A stretch of DNA of 64,000 nucleotides. It comes from Hydrolagus affinis (Eukaryota). A program made the translations under genes and the position numbers. Location: NCBI GenBank assembly GCA_012026655.1, contig JAAILG010001356.1, forward strand, positions 1 through 64,000. Reading direction: 5' to 3'. This document shows, in pieces, positions 137 to 51,903 of this stretch. The notes beneath the pieces are model-generated. The model was not told the origin of the DNA, searched no databases, and was given only the letters and a program-made list of their open reading frames with translations. Numbering within the stretch: the first letter of the stretch is position 1; each line of letters starts with the position of its first letter.

Positions 137-170
<34 letters not shown>
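1..170 (+). mobile_element. tRNA-derived SINE, 3' part with (TAT)n tail
   Basis: Same body (gtgggacactgctgtgcgcaattggctg...caaatgcaaggattattatt) as full-length copies elsewhere in the window. Confidence 0.88.
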
Positions 171-171
<1 letters not shown>

Positions 172-462
172 GTTGGGAGGACATCTCCAAGTGTTTCATG
201 TAGCTGGGAGCCTGGCTGGGGGAGGGAGGAAAGGTAGCCTAAAGTATGGTCAAAGAGATAAGCCTTACAACTGCATTTATAGAGCGCTCCGAGATGCTGC
301 ATTGTATAACTGCAAGTTGATGTTGTTTTAAAGTTGAGGGAGGAAGGGGAAAAGACGGAGATGAATGATAAAGGAGATGCTTAAAGAACATTTGAATTTG
401 CTATTCTGAAGGTAACTTAGCTACAGAATCTAAACCTTGTTTTGTTTTACTACTCTTTGTAG

Positions 463-570
463 ATCTGAAAAAATACACAATTTATAAAGTCCGACTGACT
501 GCATCGACTGCTATGGGTGAAAGCTCTCTCTCTGAAAGAGATAACATTTTTGTGCAAACTCTTGAAGATG
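463..570 (+). CDS. PTPRQ: PTPRQ exon, FN3 C-terminal half ([36 protein letters not shown])
   Basis: ttgtag acceptor, gtaag donor, 108 nt, phase 1-1. Confidence 0.92.
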
Positions 571-984
571 GTAAGAAAAAGTGTAGCAATGCTATATTCA
601 TAGAAATACACAAGGATGCCTTCAATTTTAAGCACATTTTTCTTTAATTCAGTACTTTATTAGTTTATTCTATTAACTATAAAATATGATTGTGACTTGG
701 AAATATATTTATTTTTATCTGTAACATTTTCATTCATTGTTGTGTCATGATTTTAAGACTTTGCCTAGGTCCTCAAAATAGTTCAGAATATAATCTCTTC
801 AACTATTTGTCTTGTATAAAGATATTAGATTGAAAATATCTGTACCACAGTAATGGAACCATGGGAATGAGGCGTCACACAATTTTATTTAACTTGAGAC
901 AATGGTTTGTTCCCACATAGATAAAATCCCTGCTGGTACAGTGAGTTTGAGTAGTCCTACTGAAGCCCACTGTACAGATTCCAG

Positions 985-1092
985 ATGTATATTTGATATA
1001 GTACGTTATCACATGTTCAAGATGTCTCAAAGAGCTTCATAGCATATACTGTAAAGTGAATTGACTGTATATTTTATGGGGGAAATGCAGTG
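985..1092 (-). mobile_element. SINE 3' fragment (degraded)
   Basis: gtaaagtgaattgactgtat is the reverse complement of the SINE body. Confidence 0.65.
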
Positions 1093-1408
1093 TTTGTTTT
1101 TTTGGAAATGTACAGGAAAATTTAAACCTTGCTCTGATCTATTTATATCACACATACACTGGAATTTTAAAGGTGACATTGGGGTATATCAAGTACAAAA
1201 GATGTCTATAACTAACTGAAGTCCCTCATTTTGCTAAACATAACCTTCATCTGGAGTCTGTGTCCTTTGACACCCCCATTCAGTTGAATACAAAACTGGA
1301 AACTGAAAGCTAGCACAGGCTAGCACAATCTCTGAACAGGGTTCTCAAATTAGTAATGCTTTATAGAGGTCTTTAAAAACAAAGCTTTATGTTCTTTGAG
1401 TCTTACGG

Positions 1409-1693
1409 AGCAATAGACACCTCCCTAAAACTTGACCTTTAAAAAAAAATATTTCTGCAACTGCTGTGCGCTTGAGCTGGTCACGTCCAGAGAAACCCAA
1501 TGGGATTATTGTAAACTATGAAGTCACTTACACTAATCAGACTGATTCTTCCACAATGAATAGTTTAAAAACAAGAGTTCCTCACACAAGCCTAAACCAT
1601 TCACTCTCTTATAATGTGTCTGTGTAAATGTATACCAAGTACGGTTATGGGAATCTAACATCTTTAACTATGCTTGTGGTGACTGAAAAGATG
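1409..1693 (+). pseudogene. PTPRQ: Decayed PTPRQ FN3 exon (pseudoexon 1)
   Basis: Translates as FN3 (TPP*NLTFK..NISATAVRLSWSRPEKPNGIIVNYEVTY..YNVSV*MYTKYGYGN); acceptor reads acgg instead of acag (1407-1408); in-frame stops at 1414, 1426 and 1625; frameshifts; donor gtaagt retained at 1694. Confidence 0.88.
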
Positions 1694-2074
1694 GTAAGTA
1701 CTGATCTGTAATACTATCACTCTAAGACAGCGTTGGGGTATTAGGAATTTATATTTCTGCCAAGAACATGGAAGCACACTGCTGTTACTTGGAAAATGGG
1801 AAATTATAGCTCTTACTCAATACATCAAACATGTTTTCTGCAGCTGGGATATAATTCTGATCCATTAAAAAGCCATCTGTAGCTGTGGAAGCTGATATCT
1901 CTTTAACTGTTTGCGCCTACCAGGAGATTTTTTCACCTAAAGGCCACTCACTTTAATGGAAGATTTTCTTTTTCTTGTGAAGCAAAGGGTTAACGATCAA
2001 ATGGAGCAATATTTTGTTCTGTCTGAAGGTCCATGTGATTTAGAATGTATCAACTCATCTTGCTTTCTTTACTG

Positions 2075-2325
2075 CTCCTTGCAGCCCGCCCTTTAATGTG
2101 ACCTATAAGAGCATTAGTTCCACTGAGGTAGCAGTTTCATGGAACCCACCACTGAATGCCAATAGTATTATATTATTCTACACTGTAAACTATTGGAATG
2201 CCTATGACTCCTTTAAATGCTTCCTTATATGAGACATTTCTTGTAAGTTTTCCCAATACTCAGTTATGTTTTCCACTACTGCAGGGTTTGGCACTGAAAA
2301 ATTAAATGAACGACATGCTAAAAAA
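2075..2325 (+). pseudogene. PTPRQ: Decayed PTPRQ FN3 exon (pseudoexon 2)
   Basis: APCSPPFNVTYKSISSTEVAVSWNPPLNANSIILFYTVNYWN...*...KFSQYSVMFSTTAGFG; acceptor reads actg instead of acag (2073-2074); TGA at 2230; 3' end approximate. Confidence 0.8.
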
Positions 2326-3139
2326 GTAAACAAGTAAAAAAAAGTTGAATAGCTTGCACAACAGCTTTTGACAGGGAACAAAATATGTCTATCTCATTAT
2401 AAACTTCACAGTGGATAGTGAATTTATATCTGAGCTGAACTAATATTATTTGTAGTCTGGATGTCCACAGGATTCAGAATATTCGGTTGCAAGAATGTTT
2501 TTCCTTCCTTGTGTCAATTTTCATGACAAAGCTGTTTGACACTCTTTTTCTTTTGCTGTAATATACTGGGGAAAGCCATTTCACCCATTGAGTATGCTGC
2601 ACCATTTTATTTGTTCACCCTGAGCTCTTTATTTTTCTAATCCAGTATCTTGGCCTTTCTCTGTATCTCTTTGATATGCAAGTATATAACCATTTCTCCT
2701 TAAACATCTCAAGTACTGTACTGGGCATCTATGGTCATCTGTTAGCGCATTCCACAATCTTACAACTCTTTAGCTAATTTATCACTTCTCTATTCACTCA
2801 GTAAACTTGCTATAGAGAAGATATGGGTCAGAAATTTTTGAAAACTTCATGCACAATCATTTCAATAATGTGCTATCACTGTGGGTTTTGCTCCATTCTG
2901 ATAAATACCTTTGTTACTGTGGGTTTTATTATTAATCAATTTATTCCACAATTTGGCTCAGTTTTGATAGAGATTTACATATCAGCCCTTAGAGCACTGA
3001 CTTTTCAGTTATTTATGTGGTGTTTGCTGTTGATTTGTCAGGGAAATAAGATGTTGCAAAGAACCAAATATGTATTGTTATATCTTTTCAAAGGTAGTAA
3101 ACTGTGGCTGAGCACATTCTTTATTTGTTTACCTTACAG

Positions 3140-3322
3140 TTCCTGATGGTCCACCACAAAACATCACATATGTACACCTTTTTCCATCGGACGTAGAAGT
3201 ATCCTTCTCTCCACCAACAGCTCCTAATGGAATTATCCTTTTCTACACATTATATCTCACATCCTTGAATGGCAGTGAAGAGCGTGTAACCAACAGCACA
3301 AATGTAACTGCTAAAATAACAG
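3140..3322 (+). CDS. PTPRQ: PTPRQ exon, FN3 N-half (VPDGPPQNITY...PNGIILFYTLYL...AKITG)
   Basis: ttacag/gtaaag, 183 nt, phase 1-1. Confidence 0.93.
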
Positions 3323-3501: not shown

Positions 3502-3603
3502 GTTTAAAGACTTATGAAAAATATATTTTGAAAATATCTGCAAGTACTAGCAAAGGTGAAGGAAATCAAAGTGAACCAATGTACATTTTAACTAAAGAGG
3601 ATG
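3502..3603 (+). CDS. PTPRQ: PTPRQ exon, FN3 C-half (GLKTYEKYILKISASTSKGEGNQSEPMYILTKED)
   Basis: ttacag/gtaagt, 102 nt. Confidence 0.93.
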
Positions 3604-8318: not shown

Positions 8319-8487
8319 AATGTCACAGATTTTGATAAAGAAAGCAGTGTGGAAAATGCAAACATTTCAGTCCAACTGAATAACTTGGCCAAATTCAGCC
8401 ACTATCAACTGTGGGTATCAGCTGGTACGGCTCTTGGAGATGGGAATCAGACCAGTGAAATGATTGATGTAAACACTGTTGAAGATG
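8319..8487 (+). CDS. PTPRQ: PTPRQ exon, FN3 C-half (NVTDFD...LAKFSHYQLWVSAGTALGDGNQTSEMIDVNTVED)
   Basis: tttcag/gtgag, 169 nt. Confidence 0.93.
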
Positions 8488-9536: not shown

Positions 9537-9830
9537 TTCCAGAAGGACCTGTTCAAAATGTTACCTTTCAAAATATTTCTTCAACATCAGTAACTATAAG
9601 CTGGCTACCACCTCTTCAGCCAAATGGCAATGTATTCTACCACATTTCCTGGAGTGTAGGAGTCCATGAGTTATCCAGCCAGAAGTTCTCCAAAATTACT
9701 ACTGACACAAGTATACTAATTGAAGGACTGCAAATGACCACAGACTACATGATCAGTGTCACTCCTGCAACAAGCAGAGGATATTCAGAAAATACTACAA
9801 CAATCCTACATGTCAGAACAGATGTAGGCA
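9537..9830 (+). CDS. PTPRQ: PTPRQ exon, whole FN3 repeat (VPEGPVQNVTFQNISSTSV...VRTDVG)
   Basis: tgtag/gtaagt, 294 nt; ORF 9524..9838. Confidence 0.93.
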
Positions 9831-10731: not shown

Positions 10732-11007
10732 TTCCAGAAATATCACCAGCAAATCTCACATATAGAAATCTATCAGCTACTGCAATCCAACTATCCTGGA
10801 ATCCAATTTCCGAAATGAACGATACTATAATATTTTACACCATAGAACTCAGTGGACCGTCTGGGACTAATTTCTCCACAACCACAAGGAATAGTCTAAC
10901 CATAACTAACCTTCTGCCTTTCACACACTATAATGTCTCTGTGTCTGCAAACACAAGCAAAGGTATTGGTTCCTCCTCTTCACTCACGGTATTAACAGAT
11001 GAATCAG
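10732..11007 (+). CDS. PTPRQ: PTPRQ exon, whole FN3 repeat (PEISPANLTYRNLSATA...VLTDES)
   Basis: tttag/gtgag, 276 nt. Confidence 0.93.
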
Positions 11008-37429: not shown

Positions 37430-38969
37430 ACTTAATCTCACCCTCTTCCTTGTGCAAGCTCAATTTATCTGCCCCTTTGTAAACCTTTAACCTGTGCTAC
37501 TGCTACTGTCAGGCTCTGACGGAACATTTTCCTGACAAAACAACCAAATTCTTGTAAAGATTACTTCTGACCTTGAGGAAGAACATACCCAAGGCTTTTT
37601 CATCTAAAATCTCAACAAAATGGATTTTACTACCATGAGAGTCGACTGTAAATGAAGAGCTGCTTTTGTCAAAGATCCTGACAAAAAGTACATCAATTCC
37701 ACACAAGTGGACTCCATACCACTTGTTGATTTTGAGTGTGTATTTAAATGAATAGAAATTATCCTGTTCTAATTGTTCTGATCGTCAGGATTACACAAAA
37801 ACATTTGCCACACAACCACAAAACAAAATTACATTTGCACAGTGCCTTTCACATTGCGAGGACGCCCCAGGGTGCTGGACAGTCAGTGTTTCAGACCCGA
37901 GCTGAGGTCAGGATCGGGAAGGGTAGAGGGAAGGAAAGAGGGGTGACCGATGGCCCTTTAAAGATTCCATGGCATGATCCAAAAAAAGGGGAGTTTCTTT
38001 TGGTGTCCTGGCCAACACTTCCCTCAAGGTAAAATTGGTCATTCACTTCATGGCTGTTTAAATTTATATGCAAATTTGGTTGCCACATTTGCCTACAAAT
38101 TACAGAATCATTACACTTGATAGTAAATCCCGTGAAGTTGTTTTTGAGACATTCTGGTGATGTGATAAGTTGCTATCAGGTGGGTTTCTAGTCAGCTATG
38201 TGAAGCATTTTGAGACATCCTCCTAATATGAAAGACACCAAATCAATATAAGTTGCTATTGTTGCATATCAACTGCAGGATCATCTATAATTATATCTGG
38301 GTAGGCTCTCCTCTCAAATATACTTGATAATAATTGGCTGCCTCATTGATAAGATGCTAATAGGAAATGTTTGTCCATCTGTTTCTAGATACAATATATA
38401 CTATCCACCTGCATGTAATGTTTAACTATGTCTGTCATCACCTAAAATAAATGCATTTAGGCTATTGGTTTTCATTTAAAATTAAGAAACTCATTTGAGT
38501 TACAAATTCAGCATCCTACAGTCATAAACCTTGAGCGCTTCAGTCTTCAAAAAGTATTTGTGTGTTTTTTCTGAGCTGTTTATGTGACTGTTTGTTTGTT
38601 CTGCTGAAGATGACAAGCTGTACAAGCTTGTACAAGCCTGGTGAATTGCTAATTTGCAGTTGCTAGAATTAACCCTACACGGAGCGATGGTTCTTTCGAG
38701 CATGTGCTGCTTAATCGATGTGCTGCACCCTGTGTGGTAATGTGCGTCCACCTGTGCTGATGGCTTGTTTAAAGAATTGCTTGTGTTATTCAACAATAAA
38801 GCTGGTTAACCTGCTGACAGCAGCTCTGCATGTTACCAGCACATGGTCTGTGCCATTAATCAGCCTGACTTAAAAACTGAAGCATGCTTGATAAATACAG
38901 CTTGGGAGTTTGATATTAACATGATTGCTGTTTTATGTACTAATATTCTGATGGCTCCTTTCTTCTCAG

Positions 38970-39014
38970 TTATTCCTCGTTGTTTTTTAGACGGAAGGAA
39001 ATTTTTGTCATCCA
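38970..39014 (+). CDS. PTPRQ: PTPRQ 45-nt cassette micro-exon (YSSLFFRRKEIFVIQ)
   Basis: Polypyrimidine tract plus ctcag, gtaagt donor, symmetric phase 2-2; resembles an optional peptide recalled from mammalian PTPRQ isoforms. Confidence 0.8.
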
Positions 39015-41696
39015 GTAAGTGGACTGTTCATTCTTTTGAAAGCTTGCTATTTTGATGTGTTTCAGTTCAATTTCTAATGGAAGGGAAATTTTAGCTGAAT
39101 TTCACTCTCTACAATCCTCAATGCAATTCACTTTCGAACTCAGCTTGTTGAATAGTTTCAGAACAAAGATTATTATAATGATTTCACCCTTCTAGTCCAA
39201 GCTGAAACTACTGTATAGATATTTGCAATCACTGTGAAAGCAGGTCTTTCACATGAATTACCTTTATGCTGAGAATTTAAATATTAGCAACAAGTTACTC
39301 ATGTTAGGGCATTACTTGCCACTTTCTCCATTTAGTTAAACTGTTTCTTACTCCTACAATCAGACGACTATTGTCTCAGGCCTCCTAGGATAGATACTAT
39401 GACATTTATTTTGCCTGATTTGAACTATGAGTCCCCATAGACTAATAATTCTTATGTAATCTCCAGCCCCATAACATCATTCTCACTGAAGTCATGAAAC
39501 TGTCATAGACAGGGGAAGTGGGGCTTAAACAGAAATTACAGCTTCTAAATTACATAATCGTAATTCCTCCCAAGACAAAAATGTTCATGGCAACGAGGTA
39601 CTGCAAACGGAGGACTGTGAGAAACATGGAAAGTTAGTGGGGTTTGAAATGTGCGGCTTTGAAATGCTGCTCAAGACTTGAATCAAATCAATGCCTTTGT
39701 AGATTTTCTTCCTACAGTTCCTTCTCCGGGTTTGCAGGCATTTGCATACAGTCATGGTTAAAAAAAACTTCTTTAGAACCAATCAAAAAGGATAAATTAC
39801 CATCATGCACTTGCTCCTGCAATCATTTGGTGGCAATGAACAGTGATGTAAATAATGCTCCTCTAAATCCCAAATGAATAAGTGATTACTTATATATGTC
39901 TTACCAAGATAGAATGCAGACCAGTTATAACACGCTTCATGAGAGCACTGGTTTGCTTATACCTCCAAGGGTGTGAGGACCCAATTAACAGTGGATGCAC
40001 TTAGTCATTGACTCGCTGCTCAGGATGCTAAAAATGTCCGACTTCTGGGTCATCAGGCTTCCACTGTGTCTCTTCCTACATTGAACAGGTATGCAATACA
40101 GGATGTGACTGACCGCTGTGGTGATCTGATGTTCAATCTTTTTAGCGGAGGAGCTAACTGGCAGGCAGATAGCAAGTCAGGTCAGGGGGCTGGTGCACAG
40201 TGAATTTAATTCTCACAGCTTCCTTATAGGCAGATTGCGACTTTGTCACTTCACTGTATATTACACAAGTCTAGACCAAAATTAAGCATAGCACATAGTG
40301 AATTGCAGTTCTTTTGAGTATATTTTTTGAGTTGTTTTGAGGGTAGATTGAGTTTTCATGCACCTGTATCATATAAGTGGATGAAAGTGTCGCTGAATAA
40401 TCAAACTTATTTAATGTCACAATATTTGTTGATGTCTGTTTCTTCATCTGAGGAGGTGCAATGTAACAGTTTGCTAAATTACAGACCATGCTGTTGTGTT
40501 TTAGATTTTTTTTTAGTAATTCAATCAAATCGGGGATTACAGTTTCTCAGCAAACACTTGGGGTGTATGTACCTTAATGTTGTAGTCATGCAAGCCTGCC
40601 ATAATATTTATGACCATAGCAAATTTTATAAAAAGTTATTCAGAGTCCAGCTGTGAGATCAGATATAACTGAGCTTAAAGTAAAATCAATACTCTAAATG
40701 TGAAAGACATATTTAGGGAATAAAAATCATATAAATATGCCAATGTGAACAGCTGTGAAAGTGGCCAGTGATATAATCCGTGTGAGTTTTAGTAGACAAA
40801 TTTGCACATATAAATTAATTGAATAAATGGAGCTGAACATTAGTAAAAATACCAAGATACAGTATAAGGTGATTTACAATTAATGATCACGGATAAAAGC
40901 TTTAGGTAAATTCGGTATAATTTCCCCTGACACTGTTATAGTTGACGATGTAGGTAAAATACAGGGCAGGATATTTGCTGGTCTTGCACTCCATTATTTG
41001 AAAATTGCATTTTTGAATGCACATTGTCAAGTCCTTCCATTTGCAGCAATGGAATAAAAAATATTCACTTTTGACTATTCAACTGAGCTACCATCCATTT
41101 GTATCCCATTGAAGTGTGTGCAAAACTATCTATCTGTTAGAGATTTTTAAAAGTCCTAAACTTTTGCCTCCTTTTTTTTGCTTACCTGTCCCTAACTTAG
41201 TGTGTCAGCTAATCAAAGCTATGCACACAATATGCGCACACAAGAAAAAACAAGTCTGCATTCACTAAGTAAAATGAATTCATATTCAGGTGGCATGGGT
41301 GCAATAGATTATAAAGTCTGCTTGTGATTTAACAATCAAATAGTAGCATGTCATGTTATTCAAAATTTCATGTCAGAATTCATGTTATGAAAACTCTGTT
41401 AAAATGTATTACCATCAGACCCTGTGTGCGTGTATCTTTTAAAAGACAGTAACATTGCCCCATCTGCCTAAATGAAGATTCAGTTATACTGTATTAAATT
41501 TTTCAGGTCCCAAAGATTTGCAAAGAGGATTTTAATTCCTTTAATTGAAATCAATGTGGTTTATATTCTACGTAAAATGTAATACAGTATTTGATTAGTT
41601 GCATTTTCCACAACTTTGTTACATTTCTGCTCTTTAACTAATCCTGTCTTGAAACAAATGTATTTTATGGAACCTTAATACATCTTTATATTGCAG

Positions 41697-49051: not shown

Positions 49052-49200
49052 GATGGCGATTATATGATGGTGAGGCATTTCAACTTTTCTTCTTGGCCGG
49101 AACATGGGGTTCCTGAGGGCAGCACAGCTTTGATTAATTTTGTAAAGCTTATTCGAGCATCCAGAGCCCATGATAGTACACCTATTGTTGCACATTGCAG
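49052..49200 (+). CDS. PTPRQ: PTPRQ PTP domain exon ([22 protein letters not shown]...TPIVAHC)
   Basis: gacag/gtagg, 149 nt; WPE loop at 49094-49102. Confidence 0.96.
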
Positions 49201-49718: not shown

Positions 49719-49889
<171 letters not shown>

Positions 49890-51303: not shown

Positions 51304-51903
51304 GTACTAAAAGAAAATGACTGAAACTGAATGCATAACTTTGTACTGTACTATGGAGTAACCCTGTCATATAACAATCATTTAGGTTCAATATCTCAGA
51401 AGCCAGATTATTATGTAGTGTGGATAAGTGACCAATTTCTGGGTCATCAGGTCACTACTGACACCACTTCCTGCATGTAGCGCATTGCTACATATAAGAA
51501 GCACTGTTGATGTAACATCCCTTAGTGAAGTGATGTCAGCAGCAACCTGCTACAAATACACATATATGCAGGGACAGGCTGCAGTAAGCAACATTGGTGA
51601 CACTTCCTACATGCAGCGTGCACAGGCAGTGCATGAGAAGTGACATCAGCGAAGCTTCCTGAATGGAGCAACTCAAGAAGTTTGAAGTTAGCCTTGTGTT
51701 AATGCAGGAAACTAGCTAATCAGACCCGGAAGCTGGATGTTCAGCTCTTTAGTCATAGTCGATGTTCTAGCGAGCTGCCCTGTATTTCCATAGTTGATGA
51801 TATAACTCGTAACACAACAGAATATATTGCAATATATCTTTAATGTTTATGCATGGATCAACACAATTGTAGAATGCGAAAGCAGTGCTAACTGAGTTGA
51901 ACG

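What the first reader, a model, noticed from the sequence alone, without database searches (positions are those of the whole stretch)
1409..2325. Two adjacent FN3 exons of PTPRQ have decayed into pseudoexons inside an otherwise intact gene
Seen: both segments translate as FN3 repeats, but each has lost its acceptor AG (GG at 1407-1408, TG at 2073-2074) and carries stops (1414, 1426, 1625; 2230); the first also has frameshifts. The flanking exons (end 570, start 3140) are both phase 1, so skipping gives ...TLED-VPDGPP in frame. Recalled: the first repeat matches a coding repeat of human PTPRQ (EPESSPQ...PEKPNGIII.YEV), and I do not recall a human counterpart for the second. Inference: lineage-specific shortening of the ectodomain. 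PTPRQ is required for stereociliary shaft connectors in hair cells, so link length could be affected.
Basis: partly seen in the sequence, partly recalled or inferred. Interest (0 to 1): 0.8.

Follow-up and report, generated by a model that had tools for sequence, protein, structure and literature searches.

The report
Two dead FN3 exons in PTPRQ
Two neighbouring repeat-coding exons of the hair-cell gene PTPRQ have decayed into non-coding relics in a chimaera-type fish, so the otherwise intact protein is two repeats shorter; this is an ordinary kind of exon loss in a gene whose repeat number varies widely among vertebrates.

Summary
Independent contigs from another sample of the same organism and from related organisms show no listed difference at any lesion.

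The gene is PTPRQ of a holocephalan. Its exons are 74-97% identical to Callorhinchus milii PTPRQ and about 50-77% identical to shark PTPRQ.

- **Relic 1 (1409-1693)** is the positional orthologue of a coding FN3 repeat. That repeat stands in nearly all 171 non-holocephalan models examined.
- **Relic 2 (2075 to about 2343)** is the orthologue of a repeat still coding in Heptranchias, coelacanth, amphibians and ray-finned fishes. It is absent from amniote, ray and most shark models.

Both relics carry a mutated acceptor, stops and frameshifts. No full-length in-frame exon can be rescued from them.

The C. milii RefSeq protein joins ...TLED directly to VPDGPP..., which is the predicted skip. The loss is therefore shared among chimaeras and is not private to this species.

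All other PTPRQ exons in the window are intact, including the catalytic motifs.

No RNA was examined. The functional effect on hair-bundle links is untested and probably small.

The parts
463..570 (+). Intact PTPRQ exon encoding the second half of an FN3 repeat. It ends ...TLED plus one base (phase 1), with donor GATG|GTAAGA.
   Evidence: It is 97% identical to C. milii PTPRQ and 71% identical to Heptranchias.
1407..1408 (+). Former acceptor of relic 1. It is now GG behind a preserved pyrimidine tract (gagtcttacGG|AGC).
   Evidence: No difference is listed here in the X4 or X6 contigs.
1409..1693 (+). Relic 1, a whole-FN3 pseudoexon of 285 nt. Its lesions are TAG at 1414, TAA at 1426, an A-run at 1441-1449 that is 4 nt too long, an extra T near 1605-1609 offset by a missing G after 1596 in this haplotype only, TAA at 1625, and 1 nt missing near 1687-1690. 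The donor GT at 1694-1695 is kept.
   Evidence: The Pfam fn3 match is 36.1 bits. Frameshift-aware alignment gives 57 of 94 identical to the Heptranchias repeat 1524-1617 and 55 of 95 to the Stegostoma repeat 1693-1787. The polymorphic indels are seen.
2073..2074 (+). Former acceptor of relic 2. It is now TG (ctttctttacTG|CTCC). The next AG, at 2083-2084, gives the wrong phase and an immediate stop.
   Evidence: The X6 contig 1859-2209 and the X12 contig 1936-2154 are identical to the window here.
2075..2343 (+). Relic 2, a whole-FN3 pseudoexon whose 3' limit lies somewhere between 2325 and 2343. The first 46 codons carry no lesion. After them come a frameshift near 2212, TGA at 2230, a loss of about 18 nt with a shift near 2237-2244, a shift near 2296-2305, and stops at 2303 and 2327 in the aligned frame. 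The conserved B-C loop glycine is now serine.
   Evidence: The Pfam fn3 match is 30.6 bits. Alignment gives 53 of 84 identical to the Heptranchias repeat 1618-1712, with 39 of 46 over the first 46 codons. Alignments to Amia, coelacanth, caecilian and bichir repeats agree.
3140..3322 (+). Intact PTPRQ exon encoding the first half of the next FN3 repeat. It starts (G)TT CCT GAT, reading VPDGPP, behind the acceptor ccttacAG.
   Evidence: It is 85% identical to C. milii and 66% identical to Heptranchias.
3502..3603 (+). Intact exon encoding the second half of that FN3 repeat.
   Evidence: 94% identical to C. milii.

Best explanation
The window holds the 3' two thirds of PTPRQ from a holocephalan (chimaera-type) fish. 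Two ancestral exons, each encoding a whole FN3 repeat and each flanked by phase-1 introns, have died in the interval 571-3139. Each has lost its acceptor AG and has since collected stops and frameshifts. What was once three introns and two exons is now spliced out as a single intron. Exon 463-570 therefore joins exon 3140-3322 in frame (...TLED|VPDGPP...), and the ectodomain is two FN3 repeats shorter than in the gnathostome ancestor.

Shown here:
- the lesions themselves;
- the positional orthology of both relics to coding repeats in other species;
- the intact state of the other exons in the window;
- the same junction in the C. milii RefSeq protein model.

Inferred, not shown:
- that the mRNA of this species uses the 570-to-3140 junction;
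- that the decay began before the split from Callorhinchus;
- that symmetrical phase-1 borders made the loss tolerable, perhaps after a stage of alternative skipping.
For: **Gene identity.** The best hits for every exon are proteins named PTPRQ, with C. milii closest at 74-97%. The WPE loop and the split HC|SAGVGRTG catalytic motif are intact.

**Orthology of the relics.** The best match to relic 1 in each species lies directly after the orthologue of exon 463-570. The best match to relic 2 lies directly after that, in Heptranchias, coelacanth, amphibians and bichirs. The relics have no DNA-level duplicate in the window.

**Lesions.** Independent contigs show no listed difference at them.

**No constraint on the frame.** Organism B has one A fewer in the A-run at 1441-1449. 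X4, X6 and X13 all carry an extra G after 1596.

**No rescue possible.** Of 70 stop-free phase-1/phase-1 AG...GT candidates of 30-400 nt in 571-3139, 6 overlap the relics. The longest is 72 nt.

**Skip seen in a relative.** The C. milii RefSeq model P0280 reads ...[20 protein letters not shown]....

**Rest of the gene.** It is collinear with C. milii and shark proteins as far as the PTP-domain exons at 51305, with no stops inside exons. No other FN3 relic was found with 9 orthologues at E <= 0.05.
Against: - No RNA from this species was examined.
- The C. milii Ensembl-derived model P0031 includes two short snippets of relic 1, totalling 33 residues, after a read-through of the upstream intron. 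I read this as an annotation patch, but it shows that models disagree.
- C. milii DNA was not seen, so shared lesions are not demonstrated.
- Three of the 23 differences in the X4 contig and 1 of 5 in the X6 contig are not displayed.
- The first 46 codons of relic 2 are 85% identical to Heptranchias with no lesion. That is better than most real exons in the gene (49-77%). It fits either a late loss or a very slow neutral rate, and I cannot tell which.
Confidence: 0.87

Rival explanations
1. The lesions are assembly or sequencing errors, and the exons are really intact.
For: Three clustered differences (1566, 1587, and a G missing after 1596) are private to the window against X4, X6 and X13. 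They could be a local assembly slip.
Against: At least seven separate lesions in relic 1 and at least five in relic 2 would all have to be errors. Contigs from another sample of the same organism (X4), from organism B (X6) and from organism C (X12) show no listed difference at any lesion. The X6 and X12 contigs over the relic 2 acceptor are identical to the window. The alternative state after 1596 adds a frameshift rather than removing one.
Confidence: 0.02
2. The two segments are decayed local duplicates of neighbouring FN3 exons and were never part of the ancestral transcript.
For: FN3 arrays grow by tandem duplication, and the relics resemble other repeats in the window at 30-52% identity.
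Against: There is no DNA-level similarity to any other part of the window. Each relic is most similar (57-78%) to the repeat at the same position in other gnathostomes, in the same order.
Confidence: 0.02
3. Parts of the relics are still spliced into some transcripts as short cassette or poison exons, as in the C. milii Ensembl model. They would then regulate PTPRQ output rather than being inert.
For: The relic 1 donor GATG|GTAAGT is a perfect consensus. P0031 contains two relic 1 snippets. The first 46 codons of relic 2 are unusually well kept.
Against: In this species any use of the 1693 donor in phase 1 meets TGA at 1684. In the FN3 frame the exon ends in phase 0 and shifts the downstream exon. 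The only stop-free symmetrical candidates are 72 nt or shorter and have weak sites. The C. milii RefSeq model has no insert.
Confidence: 0.08
4. The whole PTPRQ gene is a pseudogene in this species.
For: Two exons are clearly dead.
Against: About 30 other exons in the window align to C. milii and shark PTPRQ without internal stops. They have consensus splice sites, and the WPE and HC|SAGVGRTG motifs are intact.
Confidence: 0.03

Closest known systems
Callorhinchus milii PTPRQ, RefSeq XP_007903180.1 (P0280)
   Same: It has the same direct junction ...TLED|VPDGPP... with neither repeat present. Its exons are 74-97% identical to the window's.
   Different: It comes from a different holocephalan genus. 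Only the protein model was seen, so it is unknown whether the same lesions, or any relics, lie in its intron. The Ensembl-derived model of the same species (P0031) patches in 33 residues of relic 1.
Heptranchias perlo PTPRQ isoform X2 (P0163)
   Same: It holds intact coding versions of both repeats in the same order between the same flanking repeats: 1524-1617 and 1618-1711.
   Different: There the repeats are coding. The other 8 shark species and all 9 ray models examined keep only the first repeat.
In-frame loss or skipping of symmetrical (phase 1-1) FN3 cassette exons in R3 receptor phosphatases
   Same: FN3 domains of this subfamily are bordered by phase-1 introns, and repeat numbers differ between sequences (Chicote et al. 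2017, PMC5336234, passages read). Relic 1 keeps the PTPRQ-type W7G4Y B-C loop described there. Predicted amphibian isoforms differ by one repeat in this same block, for example Microcaecilia at 283 versus 188 residues.
   Different: Here the exons are not merely skipped but are visibly dead, with recognisable relics left in the intron. I found no paper describing this for PTPRQ.
Classical exon death in otherwise intact genes (recalled example: loss of tropoelastin exons in primates)
   Same: A splice-site mutation is followed by neutral decay of an in-frame exon while the gene stays functional.

Membership tests
PTPRQ orthologue | Best matches across exons are PTPRQ proteins, collinear along the gene. 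| tested here: met
   All exons match proteins named PTPRQ in order, with C. milii closest.
PTPRQ orthologue | WPE instead of WPD in the catalytic loop, together with the [10 protein letters not shown] active site. | tested here: met
   One search finds [11 protein letters not shown] at 49094. One search finds ...IVAHC | SAGVGRTGV... split over exons 49055-49198 and 49743-49886. The WPE criterion comes from PMC5336234.
PTPRQ orthologue | FN3 B-C loops of the W7G4Y type. | tested here: met
   Relic 1 reads W-SRPEKPN-G-IIVN-Y. Relic 2 has the same spacing, but its glycine is replaced by serine. The criterion comes from PMC5336234.
Pfam fn3 (PF00041) | Score above the gathering cut-off of 25 bits. 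| tested here: met
   One search gives 36.1 bits for a relic 1 piece and 30.6 bits for a relic 2 piece.
Pseudoexon (dead exon in a live gene) | Positional orthology to a coding exon in other species. | tested here: met
Pseudoexon (dead exon in a live gene) | Disabling lesions: loss of a splice site, stops and frameshifts. | tested here: met
   with contig support.
Pseudoexon (dead exon in a live gene) | Absent from the mature mRNA of this species. | not tested
   No RNA was laid. The only indirect support is the C. milii RefSeq model junction.
Pseudoexon (dead exon in a live gene) | The rest of the gene is intact. | tested here: met
   for the part of the gene inside the window. The 5' third lies outside it.

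The most novel reading that the evidence does not exclude
PTPRQ ectodomain length may be tuned lineage by lineage through the loss of individual FN3 cassette exons. On this reading, chimaeras lost these two repeats, and one of them is kept in nearly all of the 171 other gnathostome models examined. Shark and ray models lack the repeats encoded here at 9537-9830 and 10732-11007. Amniotes lack relic 2's repeat and a further one. These differences would track the spacing of stereociliary shaft connectors or the surface coat. The chimaera relics, if they date from before the Callorhinchus split, would also be very old yet still legible pseudoexons that could calibrate the slow neutral rate of holocephalan genomes.
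Probability: 0.12. Interest if true: 0.6.

Novelty: new member of a known kind. Interest (0 to 1): 0.35.

Why it matters
The finding gives a clean, datable example of exon death in a deafness gene. It shows that the repeat encoded by relic 1, otherwise present in nearly every gnathostome PTPRQ model examined, is dispensable in chimaeras.

It flags an annotation trap: one public C. milii model patches relic fragments into the protein.

It also shows that FN3 number in this block of PTPRQ differs between major vertebrate groups. That bears on how far ectodomain length constrains hair-bundle links. In itself, the loss of 2 of roughly 25-30 repeats is unlikely to change function much. The repeat total is my estimate from protein lengths of 2676-3146 residues at about 94 per repeat, not a count.

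Tried and rejected
- **Recent duplication.** blastn and tblastn of both relics against the window found no DNA-level copy. Protein similarity to other repeats was only 30-52%.
- **Further relics.** tblastn of 9 orthologues at E <= 0.05 found nothing outside known exons except one small genuine exon at 38962-39015.
- **Short ORF relatives of relic 1 from other chimaera assemblies.** This was meant to recover their DNA and date the lesions. The search for homologous proteins returned no candidate, which says nothing about longer proteins.
- **C. milii genomic DNA.** It could not be reached. P0031 and P0280 have no contig on record, so shared lesions remain untested.
- **The window species' own annotation.** No protein encoded by the window itself appeared.
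- **Organism D (X13).** A contig about 7% diverged covers 1242-2084, but only 3 of its 57 differences are displayed. Its relic 1 state at the stops is therefore unknown.
- **Literature.** 'PTPRQ' + 'exon loss' gave 2 irrelevant papers (listing only). 'PTPRQ' + 'Callorhinchus' gave 0. 'Ptprq' + isoforms + ectodomain + 'hair bundle' gave 2 listings, which I did not read. One search gave 5 listings on PTPRQ and hearing loss. I read passages of PMC9900141 and PMC5336234. The supplements of PMC5336234 (exon maps of R3 phosphatases) were not opened and may show repeat-number differences.
- **Earlier scan notes** only named the gene and the likely taxon.
- **Rows dropped from the count.** I dropped P0001-P0150 except eight named PTPRQ proteins. 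I also dropped P0302 (a coral PTPRD-like protein) and the short Rhinatrema fragments P0146 and P0161. Three ray-finned models (two Amia, one Arapaima) score a gap of 0 only because they lack the orthologue of exon 3140. They do have both repeats or the first one.
- **Joined model.** Every search was made exon by exon or piece by piece.

Full report
**What is there.** GG stands at 1407-1408 and TG at 2073-2074. Stops are TAG at 1414, TAA at 1426, TAA at 1625 and TGA at 2230. The upstream exon ends GAAGATG|GTAAGA at 570, and the downstream exon begins TTACAG|TTCCTGA at 3140. Both flanks are phase 1, so a direct join reads ...TLED-VPDGPP.

The stop-free pieces of both segments match Pfam fn3 above its 25-bit cut-off: 36.1 bits with E 7.5e-9, and 30.6 bits with E 3.9e-7. 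Two coordinates need correcting. Relic 1 ends at 1693, where its consensus donor GATG|GTAAGT is kept, so it is 285 nt, or 95 codons. Relic 2 can be followed to about 2343 when aligned to intact orthologues.

**Are the lesions real?** I called read laying early. It placed Logan contigs of four runs.
- X4 is the same coded organism from another sample and study. One contig spans 1059-3700 with 23 substitutions and 7 gap letters.
- X6 is organism B. Its contigs span 1136-1681, 1859-2209 (identical to the window) and 2207-2474 (one difference, at 2343).
- X12 is organism C. A contig over 1936-2154 is identical to the window.

None of the displayed differences touches a lesion. Three X4 differences and one X6 difference are not displayed, so I cannot place them.

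The contigs also show that the frame is under no constraint. Organism B has one A fewer in the run at 1441-1449. X4, X6 and the more distant X13 all have an extra G after 1596, together with C at 1566 and G at 1587. The window haplotype is the odd one out at these three clustered sites. No RNA was laid.

**Which gene and which animal.** A search of 1.84 billion representatives with the relic 1 piece was followed by a local comparison of every exon. The sources' names identify the gene as PTPRQ.

The closest protein is Callorhinchus milii PTPRQ, at 74-97% identity per exon. Sharks are at about 50-77%. The window therefore comes from a holocephalan other than C. milii.

The rest of the gene in the window is collinear with C. 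milii and shark proteins down to the phosphatase exons at 51305. There are no stops inside exons. The WPE loop and the HC|SAGVGRTG active site are intact.

**What the relics were.** They are not recent duplicates. Neither has a DNA-level match elsewhere in the window. Each is the positional orthologue of a coding repeat.

- In Heptranchias perlo (P0163) the repeat after the orthologue of exon 463-570 is 1524-1617, which is 57 of 94 identical to relic 1. The next repeat, 1618-1711, is 53 of 84 identical to relic 2, with 39 of 46 over the first 46 codons. The orthologue of exon 3140 follows.

I examined 173 PTPRQ models (the dropped rows are listed under Tried and rejected). The table gives the number of residues between the two flanking orthologues.

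| Group | Residues between the flanks | Models |
|---|---|---|
| Amniotes | 93-94 (relic 1's repeat only) | 109 of 109 |
| Sharks | 94 | 13 of 14 (8 of 9 species) |
| Sharks (Heptranchias) | 188 | 1 of 14 |
| Rays | 93-94 | 9 of 9 |
| Coelacanth | 188 | 1 of 1 |
| Amphibians | 283-285 (both repeats plus a third) | 24 of 29 |
| Amphibians | 188 | 4 of 29 |
| Amphibians | 94 | 1 of 29 |
| C. milii RefSeq model | 0 | 1 |
| C. milii Ensembl-derived model | 52 | 1 |

The nine ray-finned models are mixed, and three of them lack the exon 3140 orthologue altogether. One partial Polypterus model (P0067) runs from the upstream flank straight into relic 2's repeat.

Relic 1's repeat is thus present in nearly every non-holocephalan model. 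Relic 2's repeat is ancestral but has been lost repeatedly.

**The lesions, by alignment to intact orthologues.**

Relic 1:
- acceptor AG changed to GG;
- two Glu codons turned into TAG (1414) and TAA (1426);
- the A-run 4 nt too long (3 nt in organism B);
- one extra T near 1605-1609, offset in the window haplotype only by the missing G after 1596;
- a Lys codon turned into TAA (1625);
- one base missing near 1687-1690 (C. milii reads TEQD where the window reads TEKM);
- donor kept.

Relic 2:
- acceptor AG changed to TG;
- the first 46 codons clean;
- a shift near 2212;
- TGA at 2230;
- a loss of about 18 nt with a shift near 2237-2244;
- a shift near 2296-2305;
- further stops at 2303 and 2327 in the aligned frame;
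- the conserved loop glycine now serine;
- donor unclear.

I enumerated every AG...GT pair in 571-3139 that would make a stop-free phase-1/phase-1 exon of 30-400 nt. There were 70, of which six overlap the relics, and the longest is 72 nt with weak sites. Use of the good donor at 1693 meets TGA at 1684 in phase 1, or ends in phase 0 in the FN3 frame.

**How it works.** The two dead exons now lie inside one long intron, and exon 463-570 joins exon 3140-3322. FN3 exons of this receptor subfamily are bordered by phase-1 introns (PMC5336234, passages), so the loss keeps the frame.

The C. milii RefSeq model XP_007903180.1 reads ...[20 protein letters not shown]..., which is exactly this join. The Ensembl-derived C. 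milii model instead reads on into the upstream intron and patches in 15 and 18 residues of relic 1. I take this as a model built around a broken exon.

Both models point to relic 1 being dead in Callorhinchus too, so the loss is probably older than the split between the two lineages. I did not see C. milii DNA, so parallel decay is not excluded. Which lesion came first is unknown. Predicted isoforms of amphibians differ by one repeat in this same block, so a stage of alternative skipping is plausible but is only an inference.

**Open point.** The relics are not more diverged from Heptranchias than the real exons. Relic 1 is at 55-61% and relic 2 at about 62-63% overall, with 85% in its first half. 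Real exons are at 49-77%. This fits slow neutral change in chimaeras, fast protein change in the array, or a late loss of relic 2. I cannot separate these.

**Comparison with what is known, and novelty.** This is exon death in a live gene, a known kind of event. I found no paper describing it for PTPRQ. The C. milii RefSeq protein already shows the shortened form implicitly.

The array differs by one to three repeats in this block among major groups. Shark and ray models also lack orthologues of the two repeats encoded here at 9537-9830 and 10732-11007. A strong effect of two repeats therefore seems unlikely.

All searches were made exon by exon.

**Verdict.** The finding is a new member of a known kind, of modest interest.

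Noticed in passing
window 9537-9830 and 10732-11007: These two intact whole-FN3 exons are present in C. milii and have 48-51% matches at the right place in bony vertebrates. They have no orthologue in the shark models. In Heptranchias the orthologues of exons 8319-8487 and 12361 onward are contiguous (2004 to 2005). Sharks therefore seem to have lost a different pair of repeats.
   Followed up: partly
window 1566, 1587 and after 1596: Three differences within 31 bases are private to the window against X4 (same organism), X6 and X13, which agree with each other. This is either a distinct haplotype or a local assembly slip.
   Followed up: no
window 991-1090 (also 33-130 inverted, and about 20 more places): This is a high-copy interspersed repeat. 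The summed contig depth in all four runs reaches hundreds of thousands to millions, and there are at least 20 copies of 72-86% identity within the window.
   Followed up: partly
window 3182: A polymorphism lies inside the intact exon. X4 has C (Ser, the C. milii state) where the window has T (Phe). At 3186, A>G is synonymous.
   Followed up: no
P0031 residues 673-724 (C. milii, UniProt A0A4W3IS38): This public model reads through the donor of the upstream exon for 19 codons and then stitches in two snippets of the dead repeat. It is a likely annotation artefact that adds 52 spurious residues.
   Followed up: partly
window 2922-2971: Organism B (X6) lacks 50 bases here (joint 2921 to 2972). This is an intronic length difference between the relatives.
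   Followed up: no
window 139-171: An (ATT)n microsatellite.
   Followed up: no
window 38962-39015: A small 18-codon exon matches the juxtamembrane part of PTPRQ in C. milii, coelacanth, reedfish and a salamander. It is easy to miss in exon lists.
   Followed up: no
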